Shown here piece after piece: positions 20,155 through 36,752 of a stretch of 64,000 nucleotides of DNA. Numbering within the stretch: position 1 is the first letter of the stretch; the number at the start of each line of letters is the position of its first letter. The DNA comes from Haliotis cracherodii (lineage: Eukaryota). The notes under the pieces were generated by a model that was not told the DNA's origin, made no database searches, and worked only from the letters and a program-made list of their open reading frames with translations. The position numbers and the translations under genes are program-made. The stretch lies in contig NW_027266297.1 in NCBI RefSeq assembly GCF_022045235.1, forward strand, positions 60,016,001 to 60,080,000, written 5' to 3'.

Positions 20155-21165
20155 TTTGACCTGTTTACATCACAGTCTTAATACTTCTCCTGTTTACATC
20201 ACATAGTCCCTATATCTCATATTTTAACTGTTTACAGCATGTTCCCTATTTCTCAACTGTTCACATCACATAGTCCCTATATCTCATATCTTAACTGTTC
20301 ACTTCACATAGTCCCTATATTTCAACTGTTCACAATCACATAGTCCCTATATCTCATATCTTAACTGTTTACATCACATAGTCCCTATATCTCAGATGTT
20401 CACCTCACATACTCCCTAGATCTCAACTGTTCACATCACATAGTCCCTATATCTCAGATGTTCACATCACATAGTCCCTAGATCTCAACTGTTCACATGA
20501 CATAGTACCTATATCTCAACTGTTCACATCACATGTCCCCTACATCTCAACTGTTCACATCACATAGTCCCTATATCTCATATCTTAACTGTTTACATCA
20601 CATAGTCCCTATATCTCAACTATTCACATCACATAGTCACTATATCTCAACTGTTCACATCACATAGTCCCTATATCTCAGATGTTCACATCACATAGTC
20701 CCTAGATCTCAACTGTTCACATCACATAGTCCCTATATCTCAACTGTTCACATCACATAGTACCTATATCTCATATCTTAACTGTTTACATCACATAGTC
20801 CCTATATCTCAACTGTTCACATCACATAGTCCCTATATCTCAACTGTTTACATCACATGTCCCCTATATCTCAACTGTTCACATGACATAGTACCTATAC
20901 CCAACTGTTCACATCACATAGTACCTATATCTCAACTGCTTACATCACATGTCCCCTACATCTCAACTGTTCACATCACATAGTCCCTATATCTCATATC
21001 TTAACTGTTTACATCACATAGTCCCTATATCTCAACTGTTCACATCACATAGTCACTATATCTCAACTGTTCACATCACATAGTCCCTATATCTCATATC
21101 TTAACTGTTTACATCACATAGTCCCTACATCTCAATTGTTTACATCACATAGTCCCTACATTTCA
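20155..21165. repeat. 31-bp minisatellite with 39-bp variants
   Basis: Unit CTGTTCACATCACATAGTCCCTATATCTCAA. Confidence 0.95.
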
Positions 21166-21175
21166 AGCATTTAGA

Positions 21176-21345: not shown

Positions 21346-22384
21346 TCAAGCATTCAGATCAGATAGTCCCTATATCTCAGTTATCTCATGCTAGTACCAG
21401 TTCTTAATCCCCATTGTATTTTACATTAGCGGACATCCAGGACAAGCCACGCAACTATGTCACTTCTCAGTATTACTGTTGTATATATTTATTACTTAAT
21501 CTGTGTCCGATGACCTTGGATGTATAAGCATTAGTCCAGAGACAAAAATAACAAGGTTCACCCTTAGCATAGCTTGGGTTAGGCCAGGTGCCCATGGCAC
21601 GAACGCAACAACCACTACCACTATGTGCTGACCCTGGCACAAAACACTGCTTGTTCATCTAACTGTACACAGTAAATACATTGTACTTGTATATAACCAA
21701 GCCATCGACACTATGTTGTTACTTCCTACCGACAACCGTACACCGATCGACCCCTTTGCGTGTAGGAATATGCACGTCACGTCAACAACACGTCACGTCA
21801 CGTCACGTCACGTCAACGTTAATTCAAAGTCACGTGTGTGTGCAACCCAAGAATGTTGGTTGAAAATTTCAGTCGAATCCAATACACATACAGTGTAAAT
21901 CACTACACAGAATACAGAATTGTGCAGGTGCGTGTGCGAGTGCGTGTGCGAGAGCGTGTGCGTGTGCGTATGCCAGTGCGTGTGCGAGTGCGTGTGCAGC
22001 TGCGCGTACGTGTGCGTGTGCGAGTGCGTATGCGGAGAGGCGGGGAGGAGGTCTGGGTAGGCATGTTGTGCTTATGTAATCGGTGTTTATTGGTAATTTG
22101 AGGTGAAACTGGACTCACCACATAACAAATCTGACGTTTCATCGGCTTCATTATACCCCAGGCAATCCCCAGCCCCGGGCATACAATATGCCCCAACCTA
22201 TCCCCCGGATGTTTTATTTACCCTTGTATTATGTACGACATTGCTGCCAGCTGTAAGAGTGTCGTAGATTCTACGTCCGCTTCTCCCGGTTGAACCAACC
22301 CGTTCACGTGTGTAGTCCGCTTGCTTCATCTCAACACGTCAACGTGCGTACATCTTCGCATACGTATCTATCTGTTTACATATA

Positions 22385-22940
22385 AACTCGCTGCCTATCT
22401 ACCTGCGTGCATAATTACTCGCTGCCTATCTACCTGCGTGCATAATTACTCTCTGCATATCTATCTGCGTACATAATTACTCGCTGCCTATCTACCTGGG
22501 TACATAATTACTCTCTGCATATCTACCTGGGTACATAATTACTCGGTGCCTATCTATCTGCGTACATAATTACTCGCTGCCTATCTACCTGGGTACATAA
22601 TTACTCGCTGCCTATCTATCTGCGTACATAATTACTCGCTGCCTATCTACCTGGGTACATAATTACTCGCTGCCTATCTACCTGGGTACATAATTACTCG
22701 CTGCCTATCTATCTGCGTACATAATTACTCGCTGCCTATCTATCTGCGTACATAATTACTCGCTGCCTATCTACCTGGGTACATAATTACTCGCTGCATA
22801 TCTACCTGCGAGCATAATTACTCGCTGCATATCTACACCTGGGTACATAATTACTCTCTGCATATCTACCTGGGTACATAATTACTCGCTGCATATCTAC
22901 CTGTGTACATAATTACTCGCTGCATATCTACCTGCGTACA
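22385..22940. repeat. 31-bp minisatellite
   Basis: Unit TACATAATTACTCGCTGCCTATCTACCTGGG. Confidence 0.95.
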
Positions 22941-23247
22941 TATCTGCTTGCTTTCTCATCTATCTGCATATCTATCTACCTGCGTACATATCTTCTTACT
23001 TACATATATATCTGCTTACATACCTACGTACATATATACTACATCATATACCTACATATACCTATCTACTTACTTTCATATCTATCTGCATATCTGTCTT
23101 CCTCTTTACATAAATACCTGCTAACATACCTACCCACTTACATAAATTTCTGCGTGCATACCTACCCACTTACATAAAAACTTGAGTACATACATACCAA
23201 CTTACATAAATACCTGCGTAGATACCTACCCACTTACATAAATACTT

Positions 23248-23537
23248 GGGGGCACGGGTGGCCAAGTCGTCTAAGGCGCCGCGATTCGCTGTGCAGAGTT
23301 GCGTCCCTTGGGCACGTCCCTTGGCCACGTCCCTTGGGCACGCCAGAAACCTATGAATATGGGTTTCTTTCCCGGTTCGCCACGATTATGTTTCTAGGTT
23401 TGTCAGCACCATACCCGTAGTCATGGGTTTCACCGAAGTGGTAAACGTCTGAGAACTGCATCACTTCGGGCTTTCCTCCCACATTAAGCTGATACGCCGC
23501 GATATAACTGGAATAGAGTTAAACCCTACTCACTCAC
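23248..23537 (+). mobile_element. SINE family B inserted in a ~32-bp minisatellite (23105-23665)
   Basis: Head GGGGGCACGGGTGGCCAAGTCGTCTAAGGCGCC, internal triplication of GTCCCTTGGGCAC. Confidence 0.9.
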
Positions 23538-24179
23538 TACATAAATACCTGCATACATACCTGCCCACTTACATAAATACGTGCGTACATACATGTACCT
23601 ACCCACTTACATAAATACCTGCGTACATACCTACCCACTTACATAAATACCTGCGTACACACCTACTTGCGTATATATCTAGCTGTTTACATACCTACGT
23701 ACTTACATACATATAATATCGTATACCTGCTTACATATCTAACTGAGATCCACCTGCGGACATATGTATACTTATATACCTACCTATCTATTTATCTTAC
23801 ATATCGACATATATCTGCCTGCTTAGATATCTAACTGAGATCCACCTGCGGACATATGTATACTTAACTACCTACCTATATATCTATCTTACATATCGAC
23901 ATATATCTGCCTGCTTAATTATCTATCTGTACGCTTATCTGTCTCTTAACCCATCTGCCTTCTTACAGCTCTAAGCACTTACATAATTATTATGTACTGC
24001 TTACATAAATACCTGTCTGGATGTCTATCTGCATACATATGTACCGGTATAATATTTTACCTGCATACATACATGGATACATATCCATCTGCATACAAGT
24101 CTACCAGCATACACATCTATATGATCACACTTTACGTGTCGACGAATCGCTTACATATCTACCTGCTTATACATGCATC

Positions 24180-25235
24180 TTCTGGCTTACTTACCAACTT
24201 ACTGTTCTACATCTATAATGGCTAAATATCTATCTGCTTATAATGTATACCTACACCTGTTGCCTTACTTACCAACTTACTGTTCTACATCTATAATGGC
24301 TAAATATCTATCTGCTTATAATGTATACCTACACCTGTTGCCTTACTTACCAACTTACTGTTCTACATCTATAATTGCTAAATATCTATCTGCTTATAAT
24401 GTATACCTACACCTGCTGCCTTACTTACCAACTTACTGTTCTACATCTATAATTGCTAAATATCTATCTGCTTATAATGTATTCCTACACCTGTTGCTTA
24501 CTTACCAACTTACTGTTCTACATCTATAATTGCTAAATATCTACTGGCTTACAATGTATACCTACACCTGCTGGCTTACTTACCAACTTACTGTTCTACA
24601 TCTATAATTGCTAAATATCTATCTGCTTATAATGTATTCCTACACCTGTTGCTTACTTACCAACTTACTGTTCTACATCTATAATTGCTAAATATCTACT
24701 GGCTTACAATGTATACCTACACCTGCTGGCTTACTTACCAACTTACTGTTCTACATATATAACTGCTAAATATCTACTGGCTTACAATGTATACCTACAC
24801 CTGCTGGCTTACTTACCAACTTACTGTTCTACACATAAAATTGCTAAATATCTACTTGCTTACAATGTATACCTACACCTGTTGCTCAATTACCAACTTA
24901 CTGTTCTACATATATAATGGCTAAACATCTTCCTGCTTACAATGTATACCTACACCTGCTGCCTTGCTTACCAACTTACTGTTCTACATCTATAATTGCT
25001 AAATATCTACTGGCTTACAATGTATACCTACACCTGCTGCCTTACTTACCAACTTACTGTTCTACATCTATAATTGCTAAATATCTACCTGCTTATACCT
25101 ACACCTGTTGCTTACTTACCAACTTACTGTTCTACATCTATAATTGCTAAATATCTACTGGCTTACAATGTATACCTACACCTGTTGCTTAATTACCAAC
25201 TTACTGTCCCACATATATACTTGCTAAATATCTAC
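24180..25235. repeat. ~78-bp minisatellite
   Basis: Unit CTTACTTACCAACTTACTGTTCTACATCTATAATTGCTAAATATCT... Confidence 0.95.
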
Positions 25236-25246
25236 TTGTAGTCTTT

Positions 25247-27963: not shown

Positions 27964-29118
27964 CTTCTTCAATGAGGAATTCAGTGCCATTTCAAAAGAA
28001 ACTTTAAAAGGTTGTCAACAGCTCCTCATCCTTGACAAAAATAATTCAGACGAACAAATAATCATTTTGTTATTTCCTAATTTCATTCATGCAGTCATTG
28101 TAACATGTTACCTGATTTATATTTGCTCATACAAGTGTTCCCGGATATGACCGATGCTGTGACTAATGTTTGTAACAGTCAGTATTCTCGAGGTGTATTC
28201 AGGTCAACAGCCTGCTGCAAGGTCGCGTAAACAGACGTGCATGGAATGTAGGACCACCTCTGACACATCCTCTTTGCCTCATGATCATGAATGTGTTTGT
28301 GTGTGGATGCAAAGTCACATTCAAGTGTGATAATGGTATATGATTGTGACCCTGGCTACACGCTTTACTCCAACTGGTGGTATTATCGAACTGTTATTGC
28401 CCTGTGATAAACACTTTTATTTATTTTGATAAACACTCCTTTAAGATGAAATATTAATAAATGTTAAATGAACTACTTGTGTGTAAAATTCATATTGGTC
28501 TGCGTAAAATTTACATTACTATTGATTGGTAGATATTCATCAACAATCTATCAATCATATATTTCTCGAAATGAACCTCCCACGGTGGTAAAGAAGAAAA
28601 AGTTTCTTTACATGACAATAAACTTGTAGTTTATAAGATGTCGGTTATACTATAAGTATTTTTGGTGACATTTAAACATTTTGCTTGAAAACCTGTGTGA
28701 ACATGTTAACAGTACATGTACATATACATAAGCACGCACGGACATATATAGTCACCCTCAAAGGTACTTATCTATCATACATATGAATTTTGCAAGGTTT
28801 TTTATATTTTTGTTCATTTCTGGTACTCTTGTTATTTTTAGGAAAGTGTGTATATTTATTCGAGGTTATTTGTATCTGGATTCACTAACAGCTTCACATT
28901 TAAACAGGTAGTGGAATTCATCGGCTGTAGCTGGCGACATACACAATTTTACATGTCCTAAATTCTCTACCTTTACAAAGCCAACGGCCAACTTCGACGG
29001 GTAGATTACGTTTGTAGATTCTATTTTTTAGAATAGGATGACGAATTTGCTTAGATGGCAGAAGAAAGTTTTCAAATGACGGGATATCTTTTAAATATTT
29101 ATAATAATACCCTTTTGA

Positions 29119-30418
29119 ACATCCACCCCAGCATCTAACAACCAACACAGCATCCAACATCCACCCCAGCATCCAACATCCACCCCAGCATCCAACATCC
29201 ACCCCAGCATCTAACATCCACCCCAGCATCCAACATCCACCCCAGCATCTAACAACCGACACAGCATCCAACATCCACCCCAGCATCCAACAACCGACAC
29301 AGCATCCAACATCCACCCCAGCATCCAACATCCACCCCAGCATCCAACATCCACCCCAGCATCTAACAACCGACACAGCATCCAACATCCACCCCAGCAT
29401 CTAACAACCGACACAGCATCCAACATCCACCCCAGCATCCAACAACCGACACAGCATCCAACATCCACTCCAACATCCAACAACCGACACAGCATCCAAC
29501 ATCCGACACAGCATCCAACATCCACCCCAGCATCCAACAACCGACACATCATCCAACATCCACCCCAGCATCCAACAACCGACACAGCATCCAACATCCA
29601 CCCCAGCATCTAACAACCAACACAGCATCCAACATCCACCCCAGCATCCAACAACCGACACAGCATCCAACAACCGACACAGCATCCAACATCCAACAAC
29701 CGACACAGCATCCAACAACCGACACAGCATCCAACATCCGACACAGCATCCAACATCCACCCCAGCATCCAACAACCGACACAGCATCCAACATCCACCC
29801 CAGCATCCAACAACCGACACAGCATCCAACATCCACCCCAGCATCCAACAACCGACACAGCATCCAACATCCACTCCAACATCCAACAACCGACACAGCA
29901 TCCAACATCCGACACAGCATCCAACATCCACCCAAGCATCCAACAACCGACACATCATCCAACATCCACCCCAGCATCCAACAACCGACACAGCATCCAA
30001 CATCCACCCCAGCATCCAACAACCAACACATCCGACCCAGCATCCAACAACCGACACAGCATCCAACATCCACCCCAGCATCCAACAACCGACACAGCAT
30101 CCAACATCCACCCCAGCATCCAACAACCGACACAGCATCCAACATCCACCCCAGCATCCAACAACCGACAAAGCATCCAACATCCACCCCAGCATCTAAC
30201 ATCCACCCCAGCATCTAACAACCGACACAGCATCCAACATCCACCCCAGCATCTAACAACCGACACAGCATCCAACATCCACTCCAGCATCCAACAACCG
30301 ACACAGCATCCAACATCCACTCCAACATCCAACAACCGACACATCATCCAACATCCACTCCAGCATCCAACAACCGACACAGCATCCAACATCCACTCCA
30401 GCATCTAACAACCGACAC
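29119..30418. repeat. 19-bp two-variant minisatellite ending just upstream of lipase exon 2
   Basis: ACATCCACCCCAGCATCCA and ACAACCGACACAGCATCCA. Confidence 0.95.
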
Positions 30419-30449
30419 TGTTACTACAACACTGAATATTTTTCTTCAG

Positions 30450-30766
30450 GATGGTTTATTTCTTCCTCCTCTCCGGAGCCAGGACGTGTCTGCTTCACCA
30501 GCCTGGGACGCTGCTACAGCAACGCCGCCCCCTACAACAATGTGCCGGGGTTCTTACCAGAGTCCCCGGCCATACAACAGGTGCAGTTCTGGCTCTACAC
30601 ACGGGGCGACACAAACCGCCCACAGACGATTTCGGCTGATTCGGATGCCAGTATTACAACGTCCAATTTCGATGCCCATAGGGAGACGAAGGTCATCATC
30701 CATGGGTTTGGGGAGTGGGGCAACAAGTCCTGGGTGAGGATCATGAAGGACACCATTCTTACACAC
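30450..30766 (+). CDS. Lipase exon 2
   Basis: TTCTTCAG| ...VCFTSLGRCYSNAAPY...LPESP...FWLYTR...SNFDAHRETKVIIHGF...DTILTH |GTGAGT. Confidence 0.92.
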
Positions 30767-31389
30767 GTGAGTTGCTCTTGGCACCATTCTTACACACTTG
30801 AACTCATATTGGCATCATTCTTACACACGTGATATCATGTTGGCATCGTTCTTACACACGTGAGATCATGTTGGCATCATTCTTACACACGTGAGATCAT
30901 GTTGGCATCATTCTTACACACGTGATATCATGTTGGCATCATTGCTACACACGTGAGATCATGTTGGCATCATTCTTACACACGTGAGTTCATGTAGACA
31001 TCATTCTTACACACGTGAGATGATATTGGCATCATTCTCACACACGTGAGATCATGTTGGCATCATTCTTACACACGTGAGTTCATATTGGCATCATCCT
31101 TGCACACGTGAGTTCATGTTGGCATCATTCTTACACACGTGAGATCATTTTGGCATCATTCTTACACACGTGAGTTCATGTAGACATCATTCTTACACAC
31201 GTGAGATGATATTGGCATGATTCTTACACACGTGAGATCATGTTGGCATCATTCTTACACACGTGAGTTCATATTGGCATCATCCTTGCACACGTGAGTT
31301 CATGTTGGCATCATTCTTACACATGTGAGATCATATTGGCATCATTTTTGCACACGTGAGTTCATGTAGGCATCATTCTTACACACGTT

Positions 31390-31673
31390 GGGGGCACCGG
31401 TGGCCCAGTCGTCTAAGGCGCCGCGATTCGCTGTGCAGAGTTGCATCCCTTGGGCACGCCAGAAACCTATGATTGTGGGTTTCTTTCCCGGTTCTCCCGA
31501 ATTATGTTTCTAGGTTTGTCAGCACCATACCCGTGCTCGTGGGTTTCACCGAAGTGGTAAACGTCTGAGACCTGCGTCACTTCGAGCTTTCCTCCCACAT
31601 TAAGCTGATACGCCGTGATATAACTGGAATACTGTTAAAAGCGGCGTTAAACCTAACTCACTCACTCACTCAC
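31390..31673 (+). mobile_element. SINE family B within the donor array
   Basis: TSD TCTTACACACGT. Confidence 0.92.
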
Positions 31674-32012
31674 TCTTACACACGTGAGTTCATATTGGCA
31701 TTATTCTTACGCACGTGAGTTCATGTTGGCATCATTCTTATACACGTGAGTTCATGTAGGCACCATTCTTACACACGTGAGTTCATATTGGCATTATTGT
31801 TTTACATGTGAGTTCCTGTTGGCTTTACTCTGTCACACGTGAGTTCATGTTGGCATCATTCTTACACACGTGAGACCATATTGGCATCATTCTTACGCAC
31901 GTGAGTTCATGTTGGCATCATTCTTACGCACTTGAGTTCATGTTGGCATCATTCTTACGCACGTTGGTTCGTTTAAGAACTGCTTTTCACTTTGTTGAGT
32001 TCTTGGAGTATG

Positions 32013-32180
32013 GGGGCGGTCGGAAAGTCTAGTGGTTAAAGCGTTCGCTCGTCGCGCCGAAGACCCGGGTTCGATTCCCGAAATGGGTACAATGTGTGAA
32101 GCCCATTTCTGGTGTCCCCCGCCGTGATATTGCTGGAATATTGCTACAAGCGGGGTAAAACCATACTCACTCACTCACTC
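32013..32180 (+). mobile_element. SINE family A
   Basis: TSD TTGGAGTATG. Confidence 0.92.
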
Positions 32181-33216
32181 ATTGGAGTATGAAGCTGGAT
32201 CTGTGTGAACGTCCAATGGAAAAACCGTATATCGTGTAAACTTCACATCTAAAGATTAGATTGACGGCATTGCTTCACACGTGAGTTCATATTAGCACCA
32301 TTCCTACAAATCGGAGATCATACTAGTACCATTCCTTCAAGTGTTCATTTTGGCACTATTCTTTCAAATGTGAGTTCATATTGACACCATTCTTTCACAC
32401 AATATTTCATATTGTCACCATTACTTCACATGTGAGTTCATATTGGCACATTACTTCACATGTGAGTTCATATTGGCACCATTACTTCACATGCGAGTTC
32501 ATATTGGCACGATTACTTTACTTGTGAGTTCATATTGGCACATTCCTTCACATGTGAGTTCATATTGGCACCATAACTTTACATGTGAGTTCATATCGGC
32601 ACATTCCTTCACATGTGAGTTCATATTGACACCATTCTTTCACACAATATTTCATATTGGCACCATTACTTCACACAATATTTCATATTGGCACCATTCT
32701 TATACACATGCGTTCATATTGGCATGATTCTGTCACACTCTATTTCATATTGGCACCGTTACTACACATGTGAGTTCATATTGGCATCATTCCTATACAC
32801 ATGAGTTTATCTTGGCACCATTCACCTACTCGCTTACCTGGTGTCATCACTGTTAGATCCTCAGTCACAGACATGCCCACGATGCAGTCGGAGTCGTAAA
32901 TCGACTCTGCTTTCGGCAGATGAATATAGAAAGGTTTTTTTGTCACTTATATTTACACACGAGAATAAATATTAGAACCGTTCGTACACACGAGAGTTCA
33001 CATTGACACCATTCTTACACACATGAGGTCATATTGGCACCATTCTCACACATGTGAGTTCACATTTGCTGTTTTTTTCAAGTGAATGAGTGACTGATTT
33101 TAGTACTTATGTACTTGCCACATTGAATAGAGTGACATTGGTTTCGACAAAGATGTTTATTATATTGATGGATGGGATGGGATTATAGTGTGCTCTGCGT
33201 TTCCGTTTTGATACAG

Positions 33217-33448
33217 GATAATGTCAACGTGATCATCGTGAACTGGCGAGAAGGTGCCAAGCCCCCCGTGTACTTTCAGAGCGTCGCCAACACGCGAGTG
33301 GTGGGGACTCTATTGGAGAAACTCATCACGAGACTCAACACAGTGACAAGAGCCTCTTTTCAGAGCTTCCATTTGATTGGTCACAGCCTAGGGGCGCACG
33401 TTGCTGGCTATGCTGGGATGACGATAAATACAATTGGTAGGATAACAG
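33217..33448 (+). CDS. Lipase exon 3 (catalytic Ser)
   Basis: DNVNVIIVNW...YFQSVANTRVVG...FHLIGHSLGAHVAGYAG...GRIT. Acceptor ATACAG, donor G|GTACGT. Confidence 0.95.
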
Positions 33449-33541
33449 GTACGTCATTGTGAAACCATGTCTTTTAATTAATTGTAAAATCAAAATGAAG
33501 GAGAATATTGCTTTCAGCAACCGTCATTTTTATATCTACAG

Positions 33542-34079: not shown

Positions 34080-36752
34080 TGTTTCTGTGACTGTGGTTCA
34101 GGGTATGGTATACAGAGGACTATCTATGATCTGTGGTTGTGTTTCAGGGTATGGGATACAGAGGACTATCTATGATCTGTGGTTGTGTTTCAGGGTATGG
34201 TATACAGAGGACTATCTATTATCTGTGATTGTGTTTCAGGGTATGGTATACAGAGGACTATCTGTGATCTGTGATTGTGTTTCAGGGTATGGGATACAGA
34301 GGACTATCTATGATCTGTGATTGTGTTTCGGGATACGGGACTATGTATGATCTGTGATTGTGTTTCGGGATACAGAGGACTATCTATGATCTGTGATTGT
34401 GTTTCAGGGTATGAGATATATAGGACTATCTATGATCTGTGATTGTGTTTCAGGGTGTAGGATACAGAGGACTGTCTATGATCTGTGATTGAGTTTCAGG
34501 GTAAGGGATACAGAGGACTATCTATGATCTGTGTCTGTGTTTCGGGATACAGAGGACTATCTATGATCTGTGATTGTGTTTCAGGGTATGAGATATATAG
34601 GACTATCTATTATCTGTGATTGTGTTTCGGGGTATGGGATACAGAGGACTATCTATTATCTGTGATTGTGTTTCAGGGTATGGGATACAGAGGACTATCT
34701 ATAATCTGTGATTGTGTTTCGGGATACGGGACTCTCTATGATCTGTGATTGTGTTTCAGGGTATGAGATATATAGGACTATCTATGATCTGTGATTGTGT
34801 TTCAGGGTATGGGATACAGAAGACTGTCTATGATCTGTGGTTGAGTTTCAGGGTAAGGGATACAGAGGACTATCTATGATCTGTGATTGTGTTTCGGGAT
34901 ACAGTGAGTGAGTGAGTGAGTATGGTTTTACGCCACTTTTAGCAATATTCCAGCAATATCACGGCGGGGGACACCAGAAATGAGCTTCACACATTGTACC
35001 CATGTCGGGAATCGAACCCGGGTCTTCGGCGTGACGAGCGAACTCTTTAACCACTAGGCTACCCGACCGCCCCGTTTCGGGATACAGAGGACTATCTATG
35101 ATCTGTGATTGTGTTTCAGGGTATGGGATAGGGAGGACTGTCTATGATCTGTGATTGAGTTTCAGGGTAAGGGATACAGAGGACTATCTATGATCTGTGA
35201 TTGTGTTTCAGGATAAGGGATACAGAGGACTATCTATGATCTGTGATTGTGTTTCGGGATACGGGACTATCTATTATCTGTGATTGTGTTTCAGGGTATG
35301 AGATATATAGGACTATCTATTATCTGTGATTATGTTTCAGGGTATGGGATACAGAGGACTATCTATTATCTGTGATTGTGTTTCAGGGTATGGGATACAG
35401 AGGACTATCTATGATCTGTGATTGTGTTTCGGGGTAAGGGATACAGAGGACTATCTATTATCTGTAATTGAGCTTCAGGGTATGGTATACAGAGGACTAT
35501 CTATGATCTGGGATTGTGTTTGGGGATACAGAGGACTATCTATGATCTATGATTGTGTTTCAGGGTATGGGATACAGAGGACTACCTATTATCTGTGATT
35601 GTGTTTCGGGGTAAGGGATACAGAGGACTATCTATGATCTGTGATTGTGTTTCGGGGTAAGGGATACAGAGGACTATCTATGATATGTGACTGTGTTTCG
35701 GGATACAGGACTATCTATGATCTGTGATTGTGTTTCAGGGTATGAGATATATAGGACTATCTATTATCTGTGATTGTGTTTCAGGGTATGAGATACAGAG
35801 GACAATCTATGATCTGTGATTGTGTTTCAGGGTATGAGATACAGAGGACAATCTATGATCTGTGATTGTGTTTCGGGATACGGGACTATCTATGATCTGT
35901 GATTGTGTTTCGGGATACGGGACTATCTATGATCTGTGATTGTGTGTCAGGATACGGGACTCTCTAAGATTCGGATTGTGTTTCAGGGCATGCAATACAG
36001 AGGACTATCTATGATCTATGATTGTGTTTCAGGGCATGCAATACAGAGGACTATCTATGATCTGTGATTGTGTTTCAGGGCATGCAATACAGAGGACTAT
36101 CTATGATCTGTGATTGTGTTTCAGGGTATGGGATATAGAAGACTATCTATTATCTGTGATTGTGTTTCAGGGTATGGGATACAGAGGACTGTCTATGATC
36201 TGTGATTGTGTTTCAGGGCATGCAATACAGAGGACTATCTATGATCTGTGATTGTGTTTCAGGGTATGGGATACAGAGGACTAACTATTATCTGTGATTG
36301 TGTTTCAGGGTATAGGATACAGAAGACTATCTATGATCTGTGATTTTGTTTCGGCATACGGGACAATCTATGATCTGCGATTGTGTTTCAGGGTATGGGA
36401 TACAGAGGACTATCTATTATCTGTAATTGTGTTTCAGGGTATGGGATACAGAGCACTATCTATGATATGTGATTGTGTTTCGGGATACGGGACTATCTAT
36501 GATCTATGATTGTGTTTCAGGGTATGGGATACAGTGGAATATCTATGATCTGTGATTGTGTTTCAGGGCATGGGATTCAGAGGACTATCTATGATCAGTG
36601 ATTGTGTTTCGGGATACAGGGTTATCTATGATCTGTGAATGTGTTTCAGGGTATGGGATTCAGAGGACTATCTATGATCTGTGATTGTGTTTCGGGATAC
36701 AGGACTATCTATTATCTGTGATTGTGTTTCAGGGTATGGGATACAGAAGACC
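34080..36752 (+). repeat. ~46-bp tandem array whose unit spans the exon-5 acceptor site
   Basis: Unit TCTATGATCTGTGATTGTGTTTCAG|GGTATGGGATACAGAGGACTA, with shorter variants lacking the AG. The last copy is the real exon start. Confidence 0.95.
34904..35073 (-). mobile_element. SINE family A within the acceptor array
   Basis: TSD GTTTCGGGATACA. Confidence 0.93.

What the first reader, a model, noticed from the sequence alone, without database searches (positions are those of the whole stretch)
30750..33062. Donor array of ~50 5' splice-site copies, with the six nearest decoys weakened
Seen: the real donor is CAC|GTGAGT at 30767. Copies at exact 31-nt steps read TTGAAC (30798, GT lost), GTGATA (30829), GTGAGA (30860, 30891), GTGATA (30922) and GTGAGA (30953). 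The first intact GTGAGT is at 30984, and many follow. Exon extension hits TGA at 30830-30832, and the 30829 site shifts the frame, so only the first donor is productive. Inference: selection may have degraded the competing sites within exon-definition range while distal copies drift.
Basis: partly seen in the sequence, partly recalled or inferred. Interest (0 to 1): 0.8.

Follow-up and report, generated by a model that had tools for sequence, protein, structure and literature searches.

The report
Splice-donor minisatellite in a lipase intron
An intron of a lipase gene begins with about fifty head-to-tail copies of the exon end plus its splice signal, a repeat type already known from humans and lancelets, and the weak copies next to the exon are mostly one repeat variant that multiplied locally.

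Summary
CAC|GTGAGT at 30767 is followed at exact 31-nt steps by TTGAAC, GTGATA, GTGAGA, GTGAGA, GTGATA and GTGAGA. The first intact copy is at 30984.

My census finds 50 decoys in four blocks, 24 of them intact. RNA-type contigs join 30766 directly to 33217. Every decoy would be unproductive.

This is a junction-spanning ("mirage" or F7-type) minisatellite, a known kind (PMC1557585, PMC3087553). This scan has already noted the kind in other genes of the same genome.

The claim that selection degraded the six nearest decoys is weak:
- GTGAGA recurs six more times beyond the first intact copy, inside a 6-unit higher-order repeat.
- Units 3, 4 and 6 are letter-identical to units 9 and 15, so the proximal run is a local expansion.

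A residual signal remains. Changes in units 1-6 concentrate in the donor hexamer (10 of 36 positions against 4 of 150 in the body). Unit 1 has lost its GT. These amount to only about 4-5 independent events (p about 0.01-0.05). Selection on the nearest one or two decoys is therefore possible but unproven.

The parts
30450..30766 (+). Lipase exon A. It ends in phase 0 with ...W V R I M K D T I L T H.
   Evidence: Pfam Lipase PF00151 positions 10-95. RNA-type contigs cover 30448-30766. The same intron position is seen in at least 11 paralogue exons.
30734..30766 (+). Exon tail of 33 nt that is itself a unit of the repeat. It begins with GTGAG, a direct repeat of the donor's GTGAG 33 nt downstream.
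   Evidence: TRF starts the array at 30734. The global alignment of the tail to units scores 19-21. None of 2000 shuffles reaches that score (maximum 5), and 451 control 33-mers from the exons reach at most 3.
30767..30772 (+). Real 5' splice site, CAC|GTGAGT.
   Evidence: Contigs X1 record 1 and X3 record 16 join 30766 directly to 33217.
30798..31389 (+). Block 1: decoy units 1-19 plus the start of the unit split by the insert. Units 1-6 have no GTGAGT. Units 7-12 and 13-18 form a 186-nt higher-order repeat.
   Evidence: The two higher-order copies differ at 6 of 186 positions. Units 3, 4, 6, 9 and 15 are identical.
31390..31675 (+). Retroposon (SINE-like) insert with an (ACTC)n tail, flanked by a 10-12 nt target-site duplication inside one repeat unit.
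   Evidence: The duplication is TTACACACGT, possibly with a further TC. Summed contig depth reaches 10^5-10^6, and many loose ends fall at 31390 and 31670. ARAGORN and Rfam find nothing.
31676..31964 (+). Block 2: 9 decoy units (7 GTGAGT, 1 GTGAGA, 1 TTGAGT).
32013..32180 (+). Second SINE-like insert, in a unique spacer, with the 10-nt target-site duplication TTGGAGTATG.
   Evidence: Very high summed depth.
32268..32831 (+). Block 3: 18 older, more diverged units (9 GTGAGT, 9 without GT).
   Evidence: TRF reports 78% matches. Census.
32953..33084 (+). Block 4: 4 degenerate units. The last intact GTGAGT is at 33054.
33217..33449 (+). Lipase exon B (DNVNVIIVNW...GHSLGAH...), preceded by its acceptor AG at 33215-33216.
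   Evidence: Pfam Lipase positions 101-176. Contigs cover 33217-33449 contiguously with exon A.

Best explanation
This is a junction-spanning ("mirage" or F7-type) minisatellite.

Origin (inferred). The last 33 nt of an ancestral lipase exon start with GTGAG, and the intron starts with GTGAG. Slipped-strand mispairing or unequal exchange between these two 5-nt direct repeats duplicated the exon tail into the intron. The array then grew to about 50 units of 31 nt, each carrying CAC|GTGAGT.

Later history (shown). Two retroposons inserted into the region. The block next to the exon was reshaped by recent amplifications: a 6-unit higher-order repeat, and a run made from a unit type with A at +6.

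Splicing. The cell uses only the first copy (shown at contig level). I infer this is because the first copy is the first donor downstream of the exon's acceptor, through positional or 5'-to-3' selection as shown experimentally for human F7. The other copies are silent or give frame-shifted, stop-containing RNAs.

The weak proximal run. It is mainly a by-product of which unit variant was amplified locally, plus divergence of the boundary units. It is not site-by-site degradation by selection.
For: - The array starts inside the exon. The exon tail aligns to the unit over its full length: 0 of 2000 shuffles reach the score.
- The intron position and the W-x11|GT tail are shared by at least 11 paralogue exons, and none of them has an array. 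The exon is therefore ancestral and the array is derived from it.
- The unit occurs nowhere else in the 1.18-Gb genome, apart from one 68% match to an unrelated array.
- Contigs join 30766 to 33217 in 2 of 3 RNA-type runs. No contig depth lies on 30816-31023 in any of the 3.
- Units 3 = 4 = 6 = 9 = 15, 7 = 13 and 10 = 16. The shift-6 identity is 0.926 against 0.87-0.90 for other shifts.
- Six of the 13 units from 7 to 19 carry +6 A.
- Literature: F7, IFI6, CBS, LMNB2 and PDGF carry such minisatellites, with the first site used (PMC1557585, introduction and discussion). Amphioxus mirages show concerted evolution with boundary units excluded from it (PMC3087553, passages).
Against: - Within units 1-6 the differences from the consensus sit in the hexamer: 10 of 36 positions against 4 of 150 in the body (Fisher p = 1.3e-5 when cells are counted naively).
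- Units 7-28 show no such excess: 8 of 132 against 45 of 550, p = 0.47.
- Unit 1 has 3 of 6 hexamer positions changed against 1 of 25 body positions (p = 0.016).
- Only 1 of 45 six-unit windows lacks an intact copy, and it is the first window.
- The bodies of the proximal units are near-consensus, so plain decay at the array edge does not explain them.
- Contigs cannot exclude low-level use of decoys. In one search, 1064 joint rows were not shown.
Confidence: 0.62

Rival explanations
1. Selection has disabled the nearest decoys. Pseudo-sites close to the real donor compete with it and yield frame-shifted transcripts. Variants that destroy or weaken the first one or two copies (unit 1 lost GT, unit 2 lost +5 G and +6 T), or amplification of weak unit types next to the exon, were therefore favoured.
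For: - The hexamer-specific excess of changes in units 1-6, and the unit 1 result.
- Event-based binomial tests give p about 0.01-0.05.
- In human IFI6 and CBS only the first two pseudo-sites are used alongside the real one (PMC1557585, introduction). These are exactly the two most damaged copies here.
- None of 15 inferred donors of this gene and its paralogues has A at +6, and 12 have T (donors inferred from homology, not RNA-verified). GTGAGA may therefore be a genuinely poorer site in this species.
Against: - Only about 4-5 independent events are involved, and the +6 A is shared with six distal units.
- Units 3, 4 and 6 are identical to units 9 and 15.
- The +6 A:T contrast between proximal and distal units gives p = 0.10.
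- In F7, identical and even strengthened pseudo-sites do not compete (PMC1557585).
- The window of six was chosen after seeing the data.
- The acceptor array of the same gene keeps an intact acceptor copy about 85 nt from the real one.
Confidence: 0.28
2. The array is functional as an array. Dozens of U1-binding sites in the intron could protect the long, repeat-rich intron from premature cleavage and polyadenylation, enhance use of the upstream donor, or provide regulated unproductive splicing.
For: - 24 intact plus 10 near-intact U1-complementary sites.
- The genome's U1 has the canonical 5' end.
- There is no direct evidence.
Against: - Paralogues with the same intron position have no array.
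- Distal blocks are decaying freely: 12 of 22 copies in blocks 3-4 have lost GT.
- By a crude genome count, triples of GTAAGT at 18-48 nt spacing are not commoner than the reversed control: 37,308 against 52,967.
Confidence: 0.07
3. The array or its unit order is an assembly artefact.
For: Short-read contigs break at the array edge: the X19 contig ends at 30773.
Against: - The exact 31-nt register holds over 20 units.
- A retroposon with a clean target-site duplication sits inside a unit.
- DNA-type contigs of another sample lie on parts of blocks 1, 3 and 4.
Confidence: 0.03

Closest known systems
Human F7 intron 7 37-bp VNTR (Borensztajn et al. 2006, PMC1557585)
   Same: The first monomer spans the exon-intron boundary. 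The real donor is followed by copies of itself. Only the most upstream site is used.
   Different: F7 has 5-9 strictly identical copies, and its monomer holds only 4 exonic bp. Here there are about 50 copies of a 31-nt unit that copies the whole 33-nt exon tail, split into four blocks by retroposons. Many copies are variant or decayed. No splicing experiment exists for this locus.
Amphioxus "mirage" minisatellites (Adh3, globin genes; PMC3087553, citing Canestro et al. 2002, which I could not read)
   Same: [quoted passage not shown] They do not disturb normal splicing, and they show concerted evolution with boundary units excluded. This gene likewise has a donor array and an acceptor array.
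   Different: The phylum differs. Earlier notes of this scan call the genome a mollusc; I did not test this. The copy number here is much larger. Length polymorphism was not tested.
Human IFI6 (6-16) intron 2 and CBS intron 13 minisatellites (as described in PMC1557585, introduction)
   Same: Many pseudo-donors follow the real one: 25 in IFI6 and 15-20 repeats in CBS.
   Different: In those genes the first two pseudo-sites are used constitutively. Here the first two are the most damaged copies, and no use of them is seen at contig level.

Membership tests
Junction-spanning (mirage / F7-type) minisatellite | Tandem array whose first monomer spans an exon-intron boundary | tested here: met
   TRF starts the array at 30734, inside the exon. 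The exon tail aligns to the unit, with 0 of 2000 shuffles reaching the score.
Junction-spanning (mirage / F7-type) minisatellite | [quoted passage not shown] | tested here: met
   24 of 50 decoys are exact GTGAGT and 10 are GTGAGA. Most are preceded by CAC or CAT.
Junction-spanning (mirage / F7-type) minisatellite | Normal mRNA is spliced from the most upstream copy | tested here: met
   X1 record 1 and X3 record 16 join 30766|33217. No depth lies on 30816-31023 in 3 of 3 RNA-type runs. These are contigs only, so minor isoforms are not excluded.
Junction-spanning (mirage / F7-type) minisatellite | Concerted evolution inside the cluster, with boundary units diverged | tested here: met
   There are identity classes of units and a 186-nt higher-order repeat. 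Units 0 and 1 are the most divergent of block 1, at 4-8 mismatches to all other units.
Junction-spanning (mirage / F7-type) minisatellite | Variable copy number between alleles (VNTR behaviour) | not testable with these tools
   Only one assembly was available.
Pancreatic-type lipase (Pfam PF00151) | Match to the Lipase profile above the curated cut-off | tested here: met
   Exon A scores 38.5 bits and exon B 70.7 bits against a cut-off of 27. They cover consecutive profile positions 10-95 and 101-176. The exons were searched separately.
   GTGAGA occurs at 6 of 13 units beyond the first intact copy. Units 3, 4 and 6 are identical to units 9 and 15.
   Proximal units show 10 of 36 against 4 of 150, while distal units show 8 of 132 against 45 of 550. 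This reduces to about 4-5 events, with p about 0.01-0.05.

The most novel reading that the evidence does not exclude
The two decoys nearest the exon were disabled by selection. These are +31 nt (GT lost, with three changes in the hexamer and one in the body) and +62 nt (+5 and +6 lost). As in human IFI6 and CBS, only the first one or two pseudo-sites can compete with the real donor. The locus would then be a natural read-out of the distance over which 5' splice sites compete in this animal. If the many similar arrays of this genome show the same signature, they would make that rule measurable genome-wide.
Probability: 0.25. Interest if true: 0.55.

Novelty: new member of a known kind. Interest (0 to 1): 0.3.

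Why it matters
Arrays of identical splice donors are natural experiments on how the spliceosome picks one site among many. This locus adds a large example from outside the chordates: 50 decoys, 24 of them perfect. The first copy is still the one used, in line with the positional rule established for human F7.

The claimed selective weakening of nearby decoys would be new, but this locus alone cannot carry it. A genome-wide analysis of such arrays could test it properly. The scan's earlier notes say these arrays are frequent in this genome.

Tried and rejected
- **Unit as a dispersed repeat or transposon part.** Rejected. It occurs only at this locus, apart from one 68% match to an unrelated 31-nt array.
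- **Exon end captured from a pre-existing repeat.** Rejected. The intron position and tail motif are shared by paralogues that have no array.
- **Close orthologues or alleles in protein collections, to compare the proximal units across species.** Nothing close was found. The best match is 48% identical, and one search gave no hit, for proteins of 0.55-1.75 times the query length only.
- **Independent test on other donor arrays of this genome.**
  - The 200 kb to the right of the window held 7 arrays of 12-150 nt period, none with a GTRAGT consensus.
  - A pattern search located many arrays. It could not serve for the test, because the pattern demands three intact copies in a row, and because no more genome letters could be cut.
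  - The minus-strand 78-nt array at 24185-25236 carries donor-like motifs, but it starts at a SINE rather than an exon. I did not use it.
- **Species-trained donor model.** Not feasible. I used only in-register U1 complementarity and 15 homology-inferred donors.
- **Local RNA structure.** A CUUAC-ACAC-GUGAG hairpin forms in real and decoy units, but it is not better than shuffles.
- **Other negative or blocked steps.** tRNA and Rfam scans of the inserts were negative. Supplements of PMC3087553 (unit alignments and trees of mirages) were not opened. Canestro et al. 2002 (PMC117041) is not held.

Full report
**What is there.** The window holds a pancreatic-type lipase gene on the + strand. Exon A (30450-30766) and exon B (33217-33449) match consecutive parts of Pfam Lipase PF00151: profile positions 10-95 and 101-176, at 38.5 and 70.7 bits against a cut-off of 27. 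I searched the exons separately and joined no spliced model. The 2.45-kb intron between them consists mostly of a 31-nt tandem repeat. TRF reports four blocks: 30734-31388 (21 copies, 87% matches), 31670-31964 (9.5 copies), 32268-32823 (18 copies, 78%) and 32953-33066 (3.7 copies). The first block starts inside the exon.

**Check of the observation.**
- At exact 31-nt steps from the donor CAC|GTGAGT (30767), the hexamers read TTGAAC, GTGATA, GTGAGA, GTGAGA, GTGATA, GTGAGA, then GTGAGT at 30984.
- Reading the exon on in frame meets TGA at 30830.
- Sites at +31 and +62 shift the frame. Exon B read in either shifted frame stops within five codons. Only the first donor can give the lipase.
- A register walk over all blocks gives 50 decoys: 24 GTGAGT, 10 GTGAGA, 2 GTGATA and 14 that lack GT or are otherwise broken. 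One unit with a 4-nt deletion at about 32343 is counted as broken.

| Block | Decoys | GTGAGT | GTGAGA | GTGATA | No GT |
|---|---|---|---|---|---|
| 1 | 19 | 7 | 9 | 2 | 1 |
| 2 | 9 | 7 | 1 | 0 | 1 |
| 3 | 18 | 9 | 0 | 0 | 9 |
| 4 | 4 | 1 | 0 | 0 | 3 |

**Transcripts.** I laid four public runs on 30400-33500. All were contigs, not raw reads.
- In two RNA-type runs with different organism labels, one contig covers 30448-30766 and continues without a gap at 33217-33449 (X1 record 1, 1186 nt; X3 record 16, 1118 nt).
- In the third RNA-type run (X6), contigs end at the junction on both sides.
- None of the three has depth on 30816-31023. X3 has slight depth (1.7-2.8) on 31024-31231.
- The fourth run (X19) behaves as DNA: its contigs cross 30766 into the intron and cross the acceptor.
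- Contigs drop rare forms, and 1064 of 1079 joint rows were not shown. Low-level use of decoys is therefore not excluded.

**Origin.**
- The unit occurs nowhere else in the 1.18-Gb genome, apart from a 68% match to an unrelated 31-nt array.
- Fifteen paralogous lipase exons lie in the same genome. At least 11 end at the homologous codon with W-x11|GT, for example WVQVMKDTFLKL|GT. None is followed by a repeat. The intron and the exon tail are therefore ancestral, and the array was copied from them.
- The last 33 nt of the exon (30734-30766) align to the unit over its whole length. The score is 19-21. The best of 2000 shuffles scores 5, and the best of 451 control 33-mers from the exons scores 3.
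- This tail begins with GTGAG and the intron begins with GTGAG. The two are a 5-nt direct repeat 33 nt apart.
- I infer slippage or unequal exchange between them as the founding event.
- A SINE-like element with an (ACTC)n tail later inserted into one unit, duplicating a 10-12 nt target (31390-31675). A second inserted into a unique spacer (32013-32180).

**The proximal six.** Within block 1, units 7-12 and 13-18 are two copies of a 186-nt higher-order repeat. They differ at 6 of 186 positions, and the shift-6 identity is 0.926. Their hexamers end T, A, A, T, T, A. GTGAGA is thus an established unit type well beyond the first intact copy.
- Units 3, 4 and 6 are identical over 31 nt to units 9 and 15. 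Units 2 and 5 differ from that type at 2 and 3 positions.
- The proximal run is therefore a local amplification of one unit type.
- The +6 A:T contrast is 5:0 in units 2-6 against 6:7 in units 7-19 (Fisher p = 0.10).
- At the far end of the array, the last intact copy (33054) is likewise preceded by four non-intact copies.

**What still speaks for selection.**
- The first window is the only one of 45 six-unit windows without an intact copy. A naive independent-draw calculation gives p = 0.015, or 0.034 within block 1.
- In units 1-6 the differences from the consensus lie in the hexamer: 10 of 36 positions against 4 of 150 in the body. In units 7-28 the figures are 8 of 132 against 45 of 550.
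- Unit 1 has three hexamer changes, including the loss of GT, against one body change (p = 0.016).
- Counted as events rather than cells, there are about 4-5 hexamer events against 3-4 body events. The binomial p is 0.009-0.05, depending on how the events are counted.
- The 15 donors I could infer for this gene and its paralogues have T at +6 in 12 cases and never A. These donors are inferred from homology and are not RNA-verified.
- The genome's U1 has the canonical 5' end. In register, the real site forms 7 Watson-Crick pairs plus a wobble. GTGAGA forms 6, GTGATA 5 and TTGAAC 4.

**Comparison with the literature.**
- A full-text search led to Borensztajn et al. 2006 (PMC1557585). I read the abstract, introduction and discussion.
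  - Human F7 intron 7 has a 37-bp minisatellite whose first monomer spans the exon boundary.
  - The identical pseudo-sites are functional but silent, and the most upstream site wins by position.
  - The introduction lists further cases: IFI6 (25 pseudo-sites, the first two used), CBS, LMNB2 and PDGF.
  - They do not disturb splicing, and they show concerted evolution that excludes the boundary units.
  - The original paper (Canestro et al. 2002) is not held. I did not open the supplements.
- This locus meets the defining features I could test, so it is a new member of a known kind.
- Earlier notes of this scan (unchecked by me) report the same kind in MMP, AS3MT, CCDC6, KIAA2013 and kinase genes of this genome. 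They call the genome black abalone.

**Attempted replication.** I tried to test the weakening idea on other arrays.
- The 200 kb to the right of the window had no suitable array.
- A genome-wide pattern for three GTAAGT at 18-48 nt spacing matched 37,308 times, against 52,967 for the reversed control. By this crude count, donor-bearing arrays are not over-represented.
- No further genome letters could be cut.
- The acceptor array of the same gene (34084-36751) is a partial comparator. The copy next to the real acceptor (36732|36733) is the AG-less 37-nt variant, which recurs through the whole array. The next copy, about 85 nt upstream, is intact.

**Verdict.** The thing is an F7-type or mirage minisatellite, and the first donor is the one used. 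The six-site selection gradient is not supported. A weaker version, limited to the nearest one or two decoys, remains possible, at about one in four.

Noticed in passing
window 34084-36751, with the real acceptor at 36732|36733: A second junction array in the same gene. About 60 units of 46 nt copy the acceptor TTTCAG plus the first ~20 nt of the next lipase exon, in a 175-nt higher-order repeat that includes a 37-nt AG-less variant. The copy nearest the real acceptor is the AG-less variant. The next copy, about 85 nt upstream, is intact.
   Followed up: partly
window 30758-30772 and every unit: Each unit can form a small hairpin, CUUAC-ACAC-GUGAG, that covers +1 to +5 of the donor. The +6 A variant extends the stem: minimum free energy -9.9 kcal/mol against -5.1 for the real site over 39 nt. 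None is better than shuffles (z at best -1.4).
   Followed up: partly
window 31390-31675 and 32013-32180: Two SINE-like inserts with (ACTC)n tails and 10-nt target-site duplications. They share about 60 nt at the 3' end. Summed contig depth of 10^5-10^6 in all four runs shows a very abundant family. ARAGORN and Rfam recognise neither.
   Followed up: partly
window 20243-21166, 22365-22942, 53322-53945; L007 1457-1754: Four further tandem arrays of unrelated sequence also have a 31-nt period, and arrays of 32 nt lie at 23106-23713. I could not explain why this period recurs.
   Followed up: no
window 29118-30418: A 19-nt array of about 68 copies fills the upstream intron and ends about 30 nt before the acceptor of exon A. 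It carries no splice-site copy.
   Followed up: no
G000 contig C34, 64.2-68.7 Mb and 59.89-59.92 Mb: A cluster of at least a dozen paralogous lipase exons (31-42% identical) lies on the same contig as the window.
   Followed up: no
G000 contig C6, 9.319-9.348 Mb: Dozens of near-identical U1 snRNA genes in a tandem array at about 565-nt spacing.
   Followed up: no
window 32342: A DNA-type contig of another sample (X19, organism D) has four extra letters behind 32342. This is exactly where one unit of block 3 lacks four letters of its hexamer, so the deletion differs between samples.
   Followed up: no
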